From positions 186,001 through 250,000 of the forward strand of contig NW_026948115.1 in NCBI RefSeq assembly GCF_963921235.1: a stretch of 64,000 nt of DNA. The letters are read 5' to 3'. Under the pieces are notes generated by a model, which did not search any database, was not told the origin of the DNA, and saw only the letters and a list, made by a program, of their open reading frames with translations. This DNA comes from Mobula hypostoma. Lineage: Eukaryota. The position numbers and the translations under genes were made by a program. Shown here one piece after another: positions 25,877 through 61,593 of the stretch (positions are counted from its first letter, which is position 1; each line of letters opens with the position of its first letter).

Positions 25877-27691
25877 GGTCACCGTCCACAGTCCAACCTG
25901 CTCTGTGGCCCTGGCTGCTCTCCAGCCTCTTCCCAGGAGCCGCTTCTCCCAAACACATGTGGGCACAGATCCCACTCCAGTCTCACAGCCTCTGGCTGGT
26001 TCCAAAACTTTCTCCTGCAGACAGTTTGCCCAATCCACTTTGTATCTCAAATGCTAGGGATCAGGATAAAACAGGATTACCAGGGAACAGTGACATTAAC
26101 TATGTAGATGTATATAACATACAGTATATAACCATATAATGTATATAGAAATGAAACAATGATTCTCTGGACCAGGGTGTAAAGCACAGAAGTACACATA
26201 ACACATGTAACACCTGATAACTTATGAAGGTAAGGATAAATTCTACAGATGAATCATGTATAAATAACAAACTAAACTGCATAAAGTGAATATTGGAAGG
26301 TACGGAACAGATTAACCACGGACACTTCGAATGCAATGCGGGACCACTCTAGGATTCAAATAGTCAGTTGAAGTAAGATTGACCCAGGTAAACTAGAAAG
26401 AAAGCCAAGCTAAGAAATTTGTTTGTGCATAATGAGAGGCTTTGCAGTGGAGATGTTTCACCTACAGTCTGGGTACATCCCTTTAGAGGGAAGGGAAACT
26501 AATGCCAAAGGAGAAAGTCCATGCACCCCAGATCCCTCCATTCATTCACTATGTCCCTTCACATTCATGTCATACCTTTTGAGATGTAACATGACTCTTT
26601 TCCCAGGAATAAATTTCATCCACATCCTCTCCATCCATTCCCCCGCCCTCTTAACAACTTCTTCACAATTCACATCCTCCAGTTCTGTACAGACTGCAGA
26701 TTGGACCCCAGTGACCGTGGACCACCTGTTAGATCTGGCCCAGTCCCTGATCTGTACCCCCATGCTTGTACCCATGGGGTTTGTCCCACAGGTAGAGCAC
26801 CACAGTCTATTCCCTCAGCATCTCTGCCCCCAATGTCTCTGCCCACAGGCCACCATCAGGGTCCTTATCCCAGGGTAGGTGCCCTCATGGTCAGTACCTC
26901 CCTCTATCAGTGCTACATCAGCTTCCATATCCAGCATATCATCTTCGTCATTCCATCAGCTCCAGTGGAATACCACCTCGTCACACCTTCACTATTCAGG
27001 AGGTTTACAAAGACAGGTGTGTAAAAAGGGCCCGAAGAACTCCTCCACTGCTTTCAGTACCCCAGCCTGATTTACATCAGCGAGATCAAGGAGCAGCCAT
27101 TTAGCAGAGTCTTGTGTCCTGTCCCCGCCAATGACCTGACCTTTCACCTTATACAACCCATTGGTCTGTACACCCAACTCTCAGATATCTGGTAATTAGC
27201 ACCCTTTGTGTTCTGTCTAGTTTACTCACCACCCCTTTATCCAGTTTGCTTCCCTCCCCAACACTCACTCTGACCCCACCTGCCCATTTGATAATAAATA
27301 GGTTTAAATACACCGATTTCCCCGAGGTTCTCCTCCCATCTCCCCTGCCATCTGGATCCATCTGCCAATCAACCCTCTGGTTCTACCTATTACCCACAGA
27401 GTCTGTCTCTGAACTCCCTCCCTCGGCCCTCACCTGGTCCTACCCATCACCTACCATCCCTGACCTCACCCCTCACCTACACCTCTCTGATCTAGTTCAC
27501 AGCCCCCTACACTCTCAATCCCTCGGCACTGACCATCACTCTAATTCTACAAATGATTCTCGCCGTGCTGAATTTCTTTAGCAGGTTGTGGTTCTCCTTC
27601 TGTGTAATTTTCCCCGGGGTTTGGCCCCGAGGGTCTGTGACATCAGGACCCTGCCTCTCCCTCCCGTTCCCATACTTTCAATTTGTGATTC

Positions 27692-27757
27692 CAAACTCCG
27701 CTCACTCCACCCTTCCCGGCAACCGATGACTCACACATCAGCTCTTTTTCTGATTGG
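27692..27757 (+). promoter_or_regulatory. Distal S-X1-X2-Y module of the class I gene
   Basis: CAAACT, 17 nt, CCCGGCAACCGA, TGACTCA, 19 nt, ATTGG (within CTGATTGG). Confidence 0.75.
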
Positions 27758-27795
27758 ACGGATGCGGATGTTTGTAATTTTATTTCCAAGCGACT

Positions 27796-27888
27796 CAAAC
27801 TTCTGGGACCACTTCTGCCCAGAGACCAATGACGCTAAACAGAGACAGATTATGATTGGGCTGCGCTATCCCGCGGACCAATCAGCGT
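27796..27888 (+). promoter_or_regulatory. Proximal S-X1-X2-Y module plus downstream CCAAT box
   Basis: CAAACT, 16 nt, CCCAGAGACCAA, TGACGCT, 18 nt, ATTGG, then CCAATCAGCGT at 27878-27888, about 140 bp before the ATG. Confidence 0.8.
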
Positions 27889-28026
27889 GCAGTTCGGGGA
27901 TGAACCTGACGGACATCGCCCGGAGTCCGCAGACTTTGGGGAGCGGTGATCCGAGTGGTTCTGGTATTGTGCTGAGCAGTGGCGGAGCACTTGGAAACTC
28001 GAAACAGTTCTGATAGAGAGGGAATA

Positions 28027-28078
28027 ATGATGCTGCGTCTACTACTGCTGGCCCTCCTCTGTGGAGGGGTCTCCGCAG
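28027..28078 (+). CDS. UAA: MHC class I heavy chain exon 1 (signal peptide)
   Basis: MMLRLLLLALLCGGVSA followed by phase-1 donor G|GTGAGT; lies directly after the SXY promoter. Gene symbol follows cartilaginous-fish classical-lineage nomenclature and is tentative. Confidence 0.85.
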
Positions 28079-30698
28079 GTGAGTGAAGAGTCAATGGTCA
28101 GCGGGACATTCAGTGAGTGAGAGGATGGACACAGGGTCCCGACCCCAGTCGAGGTGTGAGGGTCCCACGCCCCGCAGTCTGAGGACAGGGGCGATCGGTT
28201 TGAGAGTGTTGTGTGTTCTGAGCCCCTGCAGAAACTGCACACGGGAGGCGAGATGGGGAGGGGAGTGCGGACGGATGGGTTAACACCTTCACTGACCTGG
28301 GCAGGAACCGGACAAGTGGACAGTGGGACACCAGGTGGCTGGTTACACTGGGGTTTAGAGGATGGCGAGGGAAGAGCCAATTCAGTCCTGGAGATCCGTG
28401 CTGGAGCACTGCTTCCTCCCGACACGTTAATGTGACGTAAGGGTGTGCAGGGGCATTTACACAGGACAGAGAGGGGTTCGGACTGGGTGGTGGGAAGCAG
28501 GGGTTAAATGTGTTACAGTAGGGTAATGAGGTGAGGCATCTTCGTGTTGTGAAGGAGAGGTTATTAATCTGTTAACCAGGTCTATGTACCGGCCAGCGCT
28601 GACCACCCTATCAGAGACAGAGTTTTGTCCAATCCCTCCCTCCTCCCACCCACTCATTTCCTCACTTTCCCAGTTCTGGACCTGAAACATTAACTGTGGC
28701 GCTGCCTGGGCTGTTCGGAGTTTCCAGTTTAATGGTGCAGCCCATTTTGTGTCTTCCTTCCTCTCCCAGGGATGAAACCTTTGGAGTTTCCGTAGCTCTG
28801 TGTTTTTACACGATCGGGTTGCTAGCCTCGTGCCCAACCCTCCTCTTTTCCCAGCCGGTCCCGGAACCGTCCGTGGCTGAGGTTTTTCCGATTGAAGTGT
28901 CCAAATGTCTCTTTAATGTAGTGTTAGAATGTGATTGCACCATATCCCCGGCAGTGAGTTCCAGATATCAGACACCCTCCGTGTAAAAACACCAGATCTC
29001 CTGTGAAACTCCTTCCTCTCGCCTTAACCTATGACCCCGAGTTTTAATACCCTTATGACGGGAGAAGGATTTTGACCGTCCATCCTATCTGTACCTCTCA
29101 TATATGGGGTCACCTCCTTGGCCTCCCATAGCGTGCTGAGCAGAAATGCTCACAGTTCTCAGTGCAGACTCACCGCCGTTTTATGCAGTTCCATTATTGG
29201 GAGAATGAGATCTTCTTTACCTTCTCTGTCAAGGATAATCTGAAAATCATCTGTATGTCAAGAGCAAAGGGGTAATTGGGGAGAGCAGAGATCCCTGAAG
29301 GATCAGTGTGGCTGTATATAAGTGGAGACTGAGGTCTCAAATAAATACTTCTCATATCCACTTAACTGGGGAGGTCAGGTCCATGCTGGGGAACTCAGGA
29401 AAGACTACAGAGACATCCTGAAACGTTTCAATATTACAAATGAGATGTTGGTGTTCTTGAGGTGGATAAAAATAGATAAATCCATGGATTTGATTGAGAG
29501 TATCCTAAGATATTATGGGAATGAAGGCAGAAATTGGTGGGGCCCTGGGAGATCTGTTGCTTCAGTAGATAAGGGTATGGTACCAGAAGATTGGAAGATA
29601 CCTGATGTTGTCCTTTTATGTAAGAAAGATTGCATGGGCAAGCTAGGGAACTACAGGCTGTTGAGCCTAATGTTAGTGCTGGAAAATGTACCAGATGGGA
29701 TTCTGAGAAACTGGATCTACCTGTATTTGGAAAGGCAAGGGCTGTGAAACTGTTTCTCATGAATGTGATCAAAGTCTTTGGAGAGGAGACCAAGAGGATT
29801 GACAAGGGATGGGCAGTAGATGTTGCCAACAACGGCTCTGGAAAGGCTTTTGATAACATCCTACATGGTGGACAGGTCCAGAAAGTGAGATCACATTGGA
29901 TCCAGGGTAAGCTAGCCAAATCGATACATACTTGACCCAGTGGTAGAAGTTAGGGTGTGATAGTGGACAGTAGATTTTTCAGATTGGAATCCAGTGACTG
30001 GTGGTGTATTGTGGGCATCGGTTCTGGGACTCCTGTTGCTTGTTATTTGTGTAAATGATTTGGATGAGAATGTGGGTGGTGTGTTGGGGAGTTTGCAGAT
30101 GACAACAACACTGGTGGTGTAGTGGACAGTCAATAATTTCTCTGAAGGTTAAAGAAAAACAAACTGCTGGAGGAACTTGGTAAGTGTAGAGGGAAATGGC
30201 AGTCAAAAGTTTGGCCCAGAGCCTCCATCTGGAATGATCTAAGGTTGGAACAGCAAATGTATTTTAACTTGGAGGTAGGTCATTTTGGGACTTTAAACCA
30301 GGGAGAGATTTGCACTACATATGTAATTTACTGAGGACTGTGTAGCAGCAGTACAAATGCATTGTTCCCAGTTAGACATACAATTGTAACAAGGGTGGTT
30401 TCCAGGTTGGGTTTGAACTGGGGTTGTTACGGTGAAGTTCCATACCTTTAACCAGTGGACCTCCAGGAGAGGCTCGGATCAAATGGAAGGAGTTAAAGAA
30501 TGGAGTTGAACAAAGAATTGTCACTTGAGGTTTGGTTGGTAGAGAACCCAGTCTAGGACTTGAGAATTACTGCACACAGGGTAGGTAGACTCAAGACGGA
30601 GCAATGACAAACAAAACTTAACTAAACAAACAGAACAAGGCATGGTGCACTGGTAAACTAAAATAAGATAAATGCGAAAATAATCAGCCAGGGATCAG

Positions 30699-37530: not shown

Positions 37531-37898
37531 CTCTTTACTAAAGATCAAATGTGATTTTCCTCACAGAATGGCCACACCTTCTTTTCCTACCCTTCCCATT
37601 GCTTTCCTCCACCAGTGATCCCACAAATTCCTCCTGTCCCACTGTTGCCTCTGGTGTCGACTGAGCGACATCCTGTCCATCAATGGAGAATGTGTCGGAC
37701 AGTTAGATCCTGTCTCTGCTTTGAATGTGGCTCTTGGGGTGAGGGGTGAGACCTGATTCTCCGGTTCTGGGACCCTGATTGTCTCAGGGGTTTGGGGCTA
37801 GGACCCCAGGGTCTTGGGTCTCAGGGTGCTGGTTTTGGGCATGGGTCCTTCCCGAAATTTGGATTCCCAGCCTTTCTAACTCTCTGCTCCGGTTCCAG

Positions 37899-38159
37899 GC
37901 TCTCACTCTCTCCGTTATTTCCATACGGCGGTGACCCCGGGGTCGGGGGTCCCTGAGTTCATTACGGTCGGGTACGTGGACGAGGAGCCGATCGTTTACT
38001 ACGACAGTGAGTTGGGGAAGAAGGTGCCCCGTCAGCAGTGGATGGCCGAGAGTCAGGGAGCCGACTACTGGAAACGGGAGACACAGATCTCTCAGGGCAA
38101 CGAGCCAGTGTACAAGACCAACATCCAGACCCTCATGAGCCGGACCAACCAGACAGGGG
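37899..38159 (+). CDS. UAA: MHC class I heavy chain exon 2 (alpha1 domain)
   Basis: 261 bp, phase 1-1, ccAG acceptor and GTGAGT donor; GSHSLRYFHTAV...ADYWKRET...MSRTNQTGG with Y7, Y59, R84 and the N86 sequon. Confidence 0.97.
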
Positions 38160-38189
38160 GTGAGTGGTGAACAACGTGGAGGGAGAGGG

Positions 38190-61210: not shown

Positions 61211-61320
61211 GGTTACAGGGGTGGCGGGGTCACGGTGCGGGTTATCGGGCTGTGATTGTCACTTCAGCCGCATTTGACAGATATGGATCTCCCCCCCCCC
61301 CCCCCGCCCGGTTGTTTCAG

Positions 61321-61593
61321 GGATCCACACTTTCCAGCGGATGTACGGCTGTGAGATCCGTGAGGACGGGACCACCACCGGGTTCATTCAGTACGCCTGG
61401 GACGGGTCAGACTTCATCAGCTTCGACAAGGAGAACATGGTGTGGGTGACCCCTGTGCCCTGGGGTCAGATCACCAAGAACAAGTGGGACCGGGACACGG
61501 CCGAGAAGCAGCAGAGAAAGGGATACCTGGAGCAGATCTGCACCGAATGGCTGACGAAATACGTCAAGGCCGGGAACGGTCACCTGAAACCCA
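61321..61593 (+). CDS. UAA: MHC class I heavy chain exon 3 (alpha2 domain)
   Basis: 273 bp, phase 1-1, tttcAG acceptor and GTGAGT donor; GIHTFQRMYGCEI...DFISF...ITKNKWD...GYLEQICTEWLTKY with C101/C164, F123, T143, K146, W147, Y159 and Y171. Confidence 0.97.

What the first reader, a model, noticed from the sequence alone, without database searches (positions are those of the whole stretch)
27692..27859. Tandem double SXY promoter on the class I gene
Seen: two full S-X1-X2-Y modules about 104 bp apart, both with S = CAAACT and near-canonical spacing (17/19 and 16/18), but with different X2 boxes (AP-1-type TGACTCA versus CRE-type TGACGCT) and unrelated spacers. The divergent spacers imply an old duplication with both motif sets retained. 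An ISRE-like ACTTTCAATTTG (27674-27685) precedes the distal S box, the position the ISRE holds in HLA promoters. Mammalian class I promoters are described with a single module.
Basis: partly seen in the sequence, partly recalled or inferred. Interest (0 to 1): 0.8.

Follow-up and report, generated by a model that had tools for sequence, protein, structure and literature searches.

The report
Double SXY enhancer on ray class I
The promoter of an expressed MHC class I gene of a devil ray carries two complete S-X-Y enhancer modules in tandem, and both are conserved in sawfish, skate and sharks, whereas gar and mouse have only the one nearest the gene.

Summary
At 27674-27887 lie, in order, an ISRE-like site, a distal S-X1-X2-Y module, a proximal S-X1-X2-Y module 102-104 bp downstream, and a CCAAT box. 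All of them lie upstream of every RNA 5' end seen (27897-27963).

The gene is an MHC class I gene. Its leader exon (28027-28078) is spliced to an alpha1-type exon, and its product equals an NCBI Mobula hypostoma class I protein.

Both modules recur in class I promoters of Pristis, Leucoraja, Heptranchias and Stegostoma. Motif columns are 74% identical across four species, against 48% for spacers. Both modules share one geometry: S at -27/-26 and Y at +32..+34 from the X1 half-site. Mouse H2-K has the same Y offset.

- **Proximal X box (GAGAC/GACAC type):** it corresponds to the single class I X box of gar and mouse. The sawfish sequence matches 19 of 22 bases of a mouse H2-D sequence.
- **Distal X box (GCAAC type):** it carries the RFX-consensus half-site seen in mouse class II H2-Eb.

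The AP-1 versus CRE difference between the two X2 boxes is not conserved across species. An origin by duplication is plausible but not shown.

No description of this arrangement turned up in the searchable literature. No factor binding or activity was tested.

The parts
27668..28086 (+). Conserved promoter, 5'UTR and leader block
   Evidence: The sawfish class I promoter (L037) matches the own genome best here, at 75% identity over 418 nt. The match begins 6 nt before the ISRE and ends at the leader exon.
27674..27685 (+). ISRE-like site ACTTTCAATTTG, with one good GAAAGT half on the reverse strand
   Evidence: The same position holds perfect ISREs in Pristis (ACTTTCGGTTTC) and Leucoraja (ACTTTCGATTTC). 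Four-species identity is 0.78.
27692..27697 (+). Distal S box CAAACT, 27 nt upstream of the distal X1 half-site
   Evidence: CAAACT in Pristis, CAAATC in Heptranchias, CAGACT and CAGTCT in two Mobula paralogues. Not recognisable in Leucoraja.
27716..27733 (+). Distal X1/X2 box CCGGCAACCGATGACTCA (RFX-consensus half-site GCAAC at 27719-27723; X2 TGACTCA)
   Evidence: GCAAC is kept in all elasmobranch copies except Stegostoma P0291 (GCAGC) and Mobula 31.885M, where the box is deleted. It resembles the mouse H2-Eb X box CTAGCAACTGATGA.
27750..27757 (+). Distal Y box CTGATTGG (inverted CCAAT), at +33 from X1
   Evidence: Identity is 1.00 across Mobula, Pristis, Leucoraja and Heptranchias.
27778..27795 (+). 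Conserved block between the modules, TTTTATTTCCAAGCGACT; factor unknown
   Evidence: Alignment A2. Kept in Mobula paralogues, Pristis and Heptranchias; about 20 nt are missing here in Leucoraja.
27796..27801 (+). Proximal S box CAAACT, 26 nt upstream of the proximal X1 half-site
   Evidence: CAAACT in Pristis, Heptranchias and gar at the same distance; CAAACC in Stegostoma P0217; CCAACT in Leucoraja.
27818..27836 (+). Proximal X1/X2 box CCCAGAGACCAATGACGCT (half-site GAGAC at 27822-27826; X2 TGACGCT at 27830-27836), preceded by the conserved CTTCTG
   Evidence: It corresponds to the gar box CCCGGAGTCTGCTGACGG, to mouse H2-K TCCGGACACTGTTGACGCG, and to the H2-D primer sequence. Four-species identity is 0.69.
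27852..27859 (+). Proximal Y box ATGATTGG, at +32 from the proximal X1
   Evidence: Identity 0.90. Mouse H2-K has the same +32 offset.
27875..27887 (+). Forward CCAAT box GGACCAATCAGCG, 24 nt (start to start) after the proximal Y
   Evidence: Kept in Pristis, Leucoraja, both Stegostoma genes, three of four Mobula copies, and in gar as CCAATCC.
27897..27963 (+). Region where RNA-derived contigs begin (likely dispersed, TATA-less start region)
   Evidence: Contigs of three RNA-like runs lie only at 27897-28079. The most upstream one abuts adapter sequence at 27897; others begin at 27932, 27939 and 27963. None lies at 27640-27896, which a DNA-like run does cover.
28027..28078 (+). Coding part of the leader exon (MMLRLLLLALLCGGVSA, then the first base of a Gly codon); donor GT at 28079-28080
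   Evidence: The N-terminus of P0171 is identical. RNA contigs continue behind 28079 into CTCTCACTCTCTCCGTTATTTC, the start of an alpha1 exon.
37899..38159 (+). Alpha1 exon of the class I gene
   Evidence: PF00129 match. The translation is 100% identical to residues 19-104 of P0171. The acceptor and reading phase fit the leader exon.
61321..61583 (+). Alpha2 exon (ends set by eye)
   Evidence: PF00129 match at 61317-61580; sequence read.

Best explanation
This is the promoter of an expressed MHC class I gene of a devil ray. Its order is ISRE, a distal S-X1-X2-Y module, a proximal S-X1-X2-Y module, a CCAAT box, and a TATA-less start region.

Both modules are genuine SXY modules. They share one fixed geometry and are equally conserved across sharks and rays.

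- **Proximal module.** It is the counterpart of the single class I SXY module of bony vertebrates. Its X1 half-site is GA(G/C)AC, as in mouse H2-K and H2-D.
- **Distal module.** It is an extra module with a full RFX-consensus X1 (GCAAC), the type seen in mouse class II.

Inferred mechanism: each module assembles an RFX, CREB/ATF and NF-Y platform. The two platforms sit about ten helical turns apart and together recruit an NLR-type transactivator (an NLRC5 and/or CIITA orthologue). Interferon input comes through the ISRE, and a further NF-Y site lies at the CCAAT box.

Shown here: the sequence anatomy, the conservation, the position upstream of the RNA 5' ends, and expression and splicing of exon 1. 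Inferred only: factor binding, cooperation between the modules, and which transactivator acts.
For: **Anatomy and rarity.**

**Class I gene.** PF00129 exons. Alpha1 is 100% identical to P0171, and the leader is identical.

**RNA.** Contigs lie only at 27897-28079 and are spliced into an alpha1-type exon.

**Paralogues.** Four such promoters exist in the genome.

**Other elasmobranchs.**
- Pristis and Leucoraja carry both modules plus a perfect ISRE.
- Heptranchias carries both.
- Stegostoma P0291 carries both.
- Stegostoma P0217 keeps the proximal module and only the distal X1.

**Footprint.** Motif columns 0.74 against spacers 0.48; no column shuffle out of 10000 reached the observed difference. 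The distal and proximal X boxes (0.70, 0.69) and Y boxes (1.00, 0.90) are equally conserved.

**Geometry.** S at -27/-26 and Y at +32..+34 in both modules in nearly every copy. Mouse H2-K has the same Y offset and a comparable S-region element.

**Outgroups.** Gar has one module of the proximal type directly after its ISRE. The mouse H2-K and H2-D X boxes match the proximal box: 23 of 28 and 19 of 22 bases against sawfish. Gapless scores show that gar and H2-K lean to the proximal series, and H2-Eb to the distal series.

**Factors.** An RFXAP-type domain is encoded in the genome.

**Function in mammals.** RFX5 dependence, critical spacing and the role of the S box are shown in PMC4374748.
Against: - No binding, chromatin or reporter data exist for any elasmobranch promoter.
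- Some copies have lost parts of the distal module: the X box is deleted in Mobula 31.885M, and the Y box is lost in Stegostoma P0217. The distal module is therefore dispensable for at least some class I-like genes.
- The window's own ISRE is imperfect.
- The distance between the modules is not constant: 103-104 in three species, 83 in skate, 95-99 and 72-83 in other copies. Strict helical phasing is therefore doubtful.
- RNA evidence comes from assembled contigs. These cannot prove a start site or exclude rare upstream starts.
- NLRC5, CIITA and RFX5 orthologues were not identified here. PF14621 gave no hit, and that result is uninformative.
Confidence: 0.7

Rival explanations
1. There is one working enhanceosome plus a core promoter. 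Only the distal module, with its strong RFX site, is an SXY enhanceosome. The proximal boxes act as ordinary core-promoter CRE and NF-Y sites together with the CCAAT box.
For: The proximal X1 lacks the RFX half-site consensus (GAGAC instead of GCAAC). Three NF-Y-type boxes crowd the last 130 bp before the start region. In Mobula the proximal X even reads CCAAT.
Against: The CCAAT inside the proximal X is specific to Mobula; Pristis has CCGAT and Leucoraja CCGGT. The proximal box matches the mouse H2-K and H2-D X box, which is a proven RFX5- and NLRC5-dependent site despite its weak RFX consensus. The proximal module keeps the full S(-26)-X-Y(+32) geometry, and in gar it is the only module.
Confidence: 0.12
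2. The distal module is a relic. It is a leftover of an old duplication or insertion with no present function, and its conservation is passive.
For: The distal X box is deleted in Mobula 31.885M, and the distal Y is lost in Stegostoma P0217. The two units align only weakly.
Against: The distal X and Y boxes are as conserved as the proximal ones, while the spacers between them have diverged. The internal spacing is kept to within 1-2 nt in five orders. Distal-to-proximal similarity within a species is no higher than between species, so gene conversion does not explain the retention.
Confidence: 0.06
3. There are two promoters. Each module drives its own transcription start, giving alternative 5' ends.
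For: Each module ends in a Y box that could serve a nearby downstream start.
Against: In three RNA-like runs with very deep coverage of exon 1, no contig lies between 27640 and 27896. All 5' ends lie downstream of the CCAAT box. Contigs drop rare forms, so this is not conclusive.
Confidence: 0.04
4. The second set of boxes is a chance look-alike.
For: The motifs are short. The pattern was defined after seeing the site. The units align weakly.
Against: The pattern occurs twice in the window against none in 100 shuffles. Both sets are conserved box by box in sawfish, skate, sevengill shark and zebra shark.
Confidence: 0.01

Closest known systems
Mammalian MHC class I SXY module (mouse H2-K and H2-D; NLRC5- and RFX5-dependent; Ludigs et al. 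2015, PMC4374748)
   Same: The proximal module shares several features with it. The X box is nearly the same: sawfish CTTCTGCCCAGACACCGATGAC against the H2-D primer CTTCTGCCGGGACACTGATGAC. The Y box lies at +32. A CCAAT box follows. An ISRE lies upstream.
   Different: In rays and sharks a second complete module lies between the ISRE and this one. The S box reads CAAACT rather than the H2-K S sequence. No TATA-like box is present in the ray.
MHC class II SXY module (mouse H2-Eb; CIITA-type; PMC4374748)
   Same: The distal X box has the class II type core GCAAC..GATGA followed by CTGATTGG at the same distance.
   Different: It sits on a class I gene. Its S box lies at -27, whereas CAAACT in H2-Eb lies about 8 nt closer to X (by counting).
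Spotted gar class I promoter (L042, gene of P0312)
   Same: It has the same order ISRE, CAAACT, 16 nt, CCCGGAG-type X box, inverted CCAAT, forward CCAAT.
   Different: It has a single module. Its X-to-Y distance is 8 nt shorter, and it has a TATA-like box.
Extra S/Y-like elements near known SXY genes: the H2-T10/T22 upstream S-like motif that contains a Y sequence (PMC4374748), and distal S'-Y' modules of human class II loci (recalled from memory, not checked)
   Same: More than one enhanceosome-type element serves one MHC gene.
   Different: Those are partial, or lie kilobases away. They are not two complete adjacent modules conserved across a vertebrate class.

Membership tests
SXY enhanceosome module of MHC promoters | X1 box with an RFX half-site, directly followed by or overlapping an X2 box of TGAC type | tested here: met
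   Distal: GCAAC, then TGACTCA. Proximal: GAGAC, then TGACGCT. The proximal half-site is the weak type also found in mouse H2-K and H2-D (GACAC).
SXY enhanceosome module of MHC promoters | Y box (inverted CCAAT) at a fixed distance downstream of X | tested here: met
   (G/C)ATTGG lies at +32..+34 from the first base of the X1 half-site in both modules of most copies (31 and 44 in two copies). Mouse H2-K has it at +32.
SXY enhanceosome module of MHC promoters | S box at a fixed distance upstream of X | tested here: met
   CAAACT lies at -27 (distal) and -26 (proximal). The proximal S is kept in Pristis, Heptranchias and gar, with variants in Stegostoma P0217 and Leucoraja. The distal S is kept in Pristis, with a variant in Heptranchias, and is lost in Leucoraja.
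SXY enhanceosome module of MHC promoters | Position just upstream of the transcription start of an MHC or antigen-presentation gene, in the gene's orientation | tested here: met
   Both modules lie upstream of all RNA contig 5' ends (27897-27963) of a class I gene.
SXY enhanceosome module of MHC promoters | Boxes more conserved than the spacers between species | tested here: met
   0.74 against 0.48 in four species; no column shuffle out of 10000 reached the observed difference.
SXY enhanceosome module of MHC promoters | Occupied by RFX5/RFXAP/RFXANK, CREB/ATF and NF-Y, and dependent on NLRC5 or CIITA | not testable with these tools
   Only an RFXAP-type domain was found in the genome. The RFX5-specific Pfam model gave no hit anywhere, which is uninformative.
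Single-module class I promoter (mouse, gar) | One SXY module between the ISRE and the CCAAT box | tested here: not met
   There are two modules here and in four other elasmobranch species. There is one in gar and in the mouse H2-K construct.
ISRE | Two GAAA repeats in the form GAAANNGAAA(C/G)T | tested here: inconclusive
   The window has CAAATTGAAAGT on the reverse strand, so only one half is good. Pristis and Leucoraja have perfect sites at the same place.

The most novel reading that the evidence does not exclude
The two modules divide the work. The distal, class II-type module (strong RFX site) and the proximal, class I-type module would recruit different NLR transactivators: the CIITA and NLRC5 orthologues. 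Elasmobranch class I genes would then be wired to both. This could preserve a stage close to the common regulatory ancestor of class I and class II promoters, of which bony vertebrates kept only the proximal half.
Probability: 0.15. Interest if true: 0.8.

Novelty: new variant of a known kind. Interest (0 to 1): 0.62.

Why it matters
The SXY module is the defining control element of MHC genes, and it is the docking site that separates NLRC5-driven class I from CIITA-driven class II expression in mammals.

A tandem pair of modules, one with a class I-type and one with a class II-type X box, appears to have been kept since before sharks and rays split. It gives a natural system for asking three questions:
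- How did transactivator specificity evolve?
- Do two enhanceosomes cooperate?
- What did the ancestral MHC promoter look like?

The near identity of the proximal X box between sawfish and mouse shows that this class I element is among the most deeply conserved vertebrate cis-regulatory sequences. The finding also gives annotators a signature for locating class I first exons that lie 5-40 kb upstream of the alpha1 exon in elasmobranch genomes.

Tried and rejected
- **Proximal X as a plain CCAAT box.** This was my first rival reading. I rejected it because the CCAAT is specific to Mobula.
- **Direct proof of tandem duplication.** The gapped alignment of the two units is weak (65 of 2000 shuffles reach it). 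Module-to-module z-scores of 3-5 reflect a shared motif grammar. The origin is left open.
- **Whole-module z-scores for assigning mouse H2-K to one series.** They were indecisive: 5.2 against 5.2. Comparisons anchored on the X window gave a modest lean instead.
- **Genome-wide pattern of a Y box plus CCAATCAG.** It was palindromic and far too common to be useful.
- **The look-up of sequencing runs.** It was busy twice before it answered.
- **The look-up of encoding contigs.**
  - No record for P0008, P0001 and P0198, which are shorter isoforms.
  - No DNA for Mobula birostris and Hemiscyllium, because the files are too large.
  - The Chiloscyllium punctatum locus L041 has a doubtful gene model and a decayed upstream region, so I did not use it.
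- **PF14621 (RFX5).** No hit, and none in the control genomes either, so it is uninformative.
- **The five GCAAC-type modules on C12 at 31.32-31.64 Mb.** I first took them for class II promoters, but no class II exon lies within 1.5 kb, so their genes remain unidentified.
- **The gene served by the module at 15368-15431.** I could not verify this, because its flank is largely masked.
- **Literature.** Eight full-text searches gave no description of a double SXY, or of any elasmobranch class I promoter. Subscription journals are not covered.

Full report
**What is there.** Reading 27400-28400 shows these elements on the + strand:

| Element | Sequence | Coordinates |
|---|---|---|
| ISRE-like site | ACTTTCAATTTG | 27674-27685 |
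| Distal S | CAAACT | 27692-27697 |
| Distal X1/X2 | CCGGCAACCGATGACTCA | 27716-27733 |
| Distal Y | CTGATTGG | 27750-27757 |
| Proximal S | CAAACT | 27796-27801 |
| Proximal X1/X2 | CCCAGAGACCAATGACGCT | 27818-27836 |
| Proximal Y | ATGATTGG | 27852-27859 |
| Forward CCAAT box | GGACCAATCAGCG | 27875-27887 |

The offsets between the two sets are 104, 103 and 102 bp.

The composite pattern CAAACT..ATGAC..GATTGG occurs twice in the window, both here, and never in 100 shuffles. The stricter pattern GCAAC..ATGA..GATTGG occurs once. Outside the boxes the two units are barely alike: 65 of 2000 shuffles reach the observed alignment score.

**The gene.** An ATG at 28027 opens a leader (MMLRLLLLALLCGGVSA) that ends at 28078 before a GT donor. 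A Pfam MHC_I search of the genome finds an alpha1 exon at window 37898-38164 and an alpha2 exon at 61317-61580. The alpha1 acceptor and reading phase fit the leader.

The alpha1 translation is 100% identical to residues 19-104 of P0171, which NCBI names a class I antigen of Mobula hypostoma. The N-terminus of P0171 equals this leader. Intron 1 is about 9.8 kb and holds retroelement ORFs.

**Transcripts.** Contigs of three RNA-like runs lie only at 27897-28079, at very high word depth. They continue behind 28079 into CTCTCACTCTCTCCGTTATTTC, which is the start of an alpha1 exon.
- The most upstream contig abuts adapter sequence at 27897. Others begin at 27932, 27939 and 27963.
- Nothing lies between 27640 and 27896 in these runs, although a DNA-like run covers that stretch.
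- Exon 1 is therefore expressed and spliced as expected, and both modules and the CCAAT box lie upstream of all 5' ends seen.
- Contigs cannot prove a start site or exclude rare upstream starts.
- No TATA box is present.

**Paralogues.** The own genome holds four such promoters: the window and three on contig 12. Aligned, two of the three keep the distal GCAAC X box, and one has a 17-nt deletion that removes it. All keep the proximal X box, and three of four keep the CCAAT box.

**Other species.** Protein searches led to class I genes whose DNA could be fetched.

| Species (locus) | Distal module | Proximal module | Other |
|---|---|---|---|
| Pristis pectinata (L037) | complete | complete | perfect ISRE; CCAATCAGCG |
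| Leucoraja erinacea (L038) | X and Y kept; no S box recognisable | complete | perfect ISRE; CCAATCAGCG |
| Heptranchias perlo (L040) | present | present | a 2-kb tandem array has replaced the CCAAT region |
| Stegostoma tigrinum, P0291 gene (L043) | present | present | CCAAT box kept |
| Stegostoma tigrinum, P0217 gene (L039) | only the X1 box | complete | CCAAT box kept |

In the alignment of eight promoters (A2), box columns are 0.74 identical across Mobula, Pristis, Leucoraja and Heptranchias. Spacer columns are 0.48, and no column shuffle out of 10000 reached the observed difference. The two X boxes (0.70, 0.69) and the two Y boxes (1.00, 0.90) are equally conserved.

The internal geometry is the same in both modules and in nearly all copies: S at -27/-26 and (G/C)ATTGG at +32 to +34 from the first base of the X1 half-site. 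The distance between the modules is 103, 103 and 104 in Mobula, Pristis and Heptranchias. It is 83 in Leucoraja and 72-99 in the other copies.

Distal-to-proximal similarity within a species is no higher than between species. The two series therefore separated before sharks and rays split. By common estimates that split is roughly 250-300 million years old; this figure is general knowledge and was not computed here.

**Outgroups.** The spotted gar class I promoter (L042) has one module. A triple ISRE runs directly into GCAAACT. Sixteen nt later comes CCCGGAGTCTGCTGACGG, then CCATTGG, CCAATCC and a TATA-like box. Its X box and S-to-X spacing are those of the proximal series.

The methods of Ludigs et al. 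2015 (PMC4374748) print the mouse sequences.
- The H2-K X region CTTCTGTCCGGACACTGTTGACGCGCAG matches the sawfish proximal region in 23 of 28 positions.
- The H2-D primer CTTCTGCCGGGACACTGATGAC matches it in 19 of 22.
- The class II H2-Eb X box CTAGCAACTGATGA is of the distal type.

Gapless comparisons anchored on X1 show two leanings. Gar (17.0 against 13.1 of 28) and H2-K (16.7 against 15.2) lean to the proximal series. H2-Eb, and a third SXY-type module in this window at 15368-15431, lean to the distal series.

**Reading.** The proximal module is the counterpart of the class I SXY module of bony vertebrates. The distal module is an additional SXY module with a consensus RFX half-site.

Whether it arose by tandem duplication of an S-to-Y unit of about 100 bp, as the equal geometry and equal S boxes suggest, or came from elsewhere, cannot be settled from these data. 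Nor can it be settled whether bony vertebrates lost it or elasmobranchs gained it, because no chimaera promoter could be fetched.

The stable contrast is GCAAC against GA(G/C)AC in X1.

**Mechanism.** In mammals the module is bound by RFX5/RFXAP/RFXANK, CREB/ATF1 and NF-Y, and it recruits NLRC5 or CIITA. Spacing is critical, and the S box decides which transactivator acts (PMC4374748; PMC7281430).

By analogy, two such platforms stand side by side here, with interferon input through the ISRE and a further NF-Y site at the CCAAT box. An RFXAP-type domain is encoded in the genome. Binding, cooperation and the identity of the transactivator are inferred, not shown.

**Novelty.** Eight full-text searches found no description of a double SXY or of an elasmobranch class I promoter. 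The library lacks most subscription journals, so prior description cannot be excluded.

Two earlier notes of this scan touch the site.
- One says that the class I and TAP1 X boxes look like class II X boxes. That holds for the distal box but not for the proximal one.
- The other led me to the module at 15368-15431. I confirmed its geometry, but not the gene it serves.

Noticed in passing
window 15368-15431 (- strand): A third SXY-type module: CCAACC at -27, CCCAGCAACTGATGACTCG, and CATTGG at +32. It has the same geometry as the two class I modules and stands alone, with no second module after it.
   Followed up: partly
L037 about 3400-3620; L038 about 3400-3660; window 27625-27641: Minisatellites sit directly 5' of the conserved class I promoter block in sawfish (unit of about 43 nt) and skate (12-nt unit GGGGTCTGTGTC). 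The devil ray has single copies of a similar GGGTCTGTG motif at the same place.
   Followed up: no
L040 about 975-2935: In the sevengill shark class I gene, a 2-kb array of a 43-nt unit lies between the proximal Y box and the 5'UTR, and the CCAAT box is gone. The gene may be impaired, or it may use another start.
   Followed up: no
window 27668 (edge) to 28086: Similarity between the devil ray and sawfish promoters starts abruptly 6 nt before the ISRE and runs to the end of the leader exon at 75% identity. This includes the 5'UTR and a conserved GGGGATGAACC block at the first RNA 5' end.
   Followed up: partly
L003 (G000:C12 about 31.962 Mb), seen through window 28018-28079: An RNA contig carrying the 5'UTR of this paralogue has a depth of about 22, against thousands for the window-type exon 1. 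This paralogue has lost the proximal S box, and its proximal Y and CCAAT boxes are mutated (GTTTAG, CTAAT).
   Followed up: no
L023-L027 (G000:C12 31.32-31.64 Mb): Five nearly identical promoter-like X-Y modules (GCAACCGATGACGC .. TGATTGG) have a shared downstream sequence. No coding exon lies within 1.5 kb, so the gene is not identified. Class II alpha exons lie at C12 31.48 and 31.74 Mb.
   Followed up: partly
window 28031: Half of the RNA contig depth reads C instead of T in the second codon (ATG to ACG). This points to an allele or a near-identical paralogue sharing this exon 1.
   Followed up: no
G000:C12 31.865-31.875 Mb: Three successive alpha1/alpha2 exon pairs lie downstream of one promoter (31.885 Mb). 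This is either a local triplication of the peptide-binding exons or three genes without promoters of their own.
   Followed up: no
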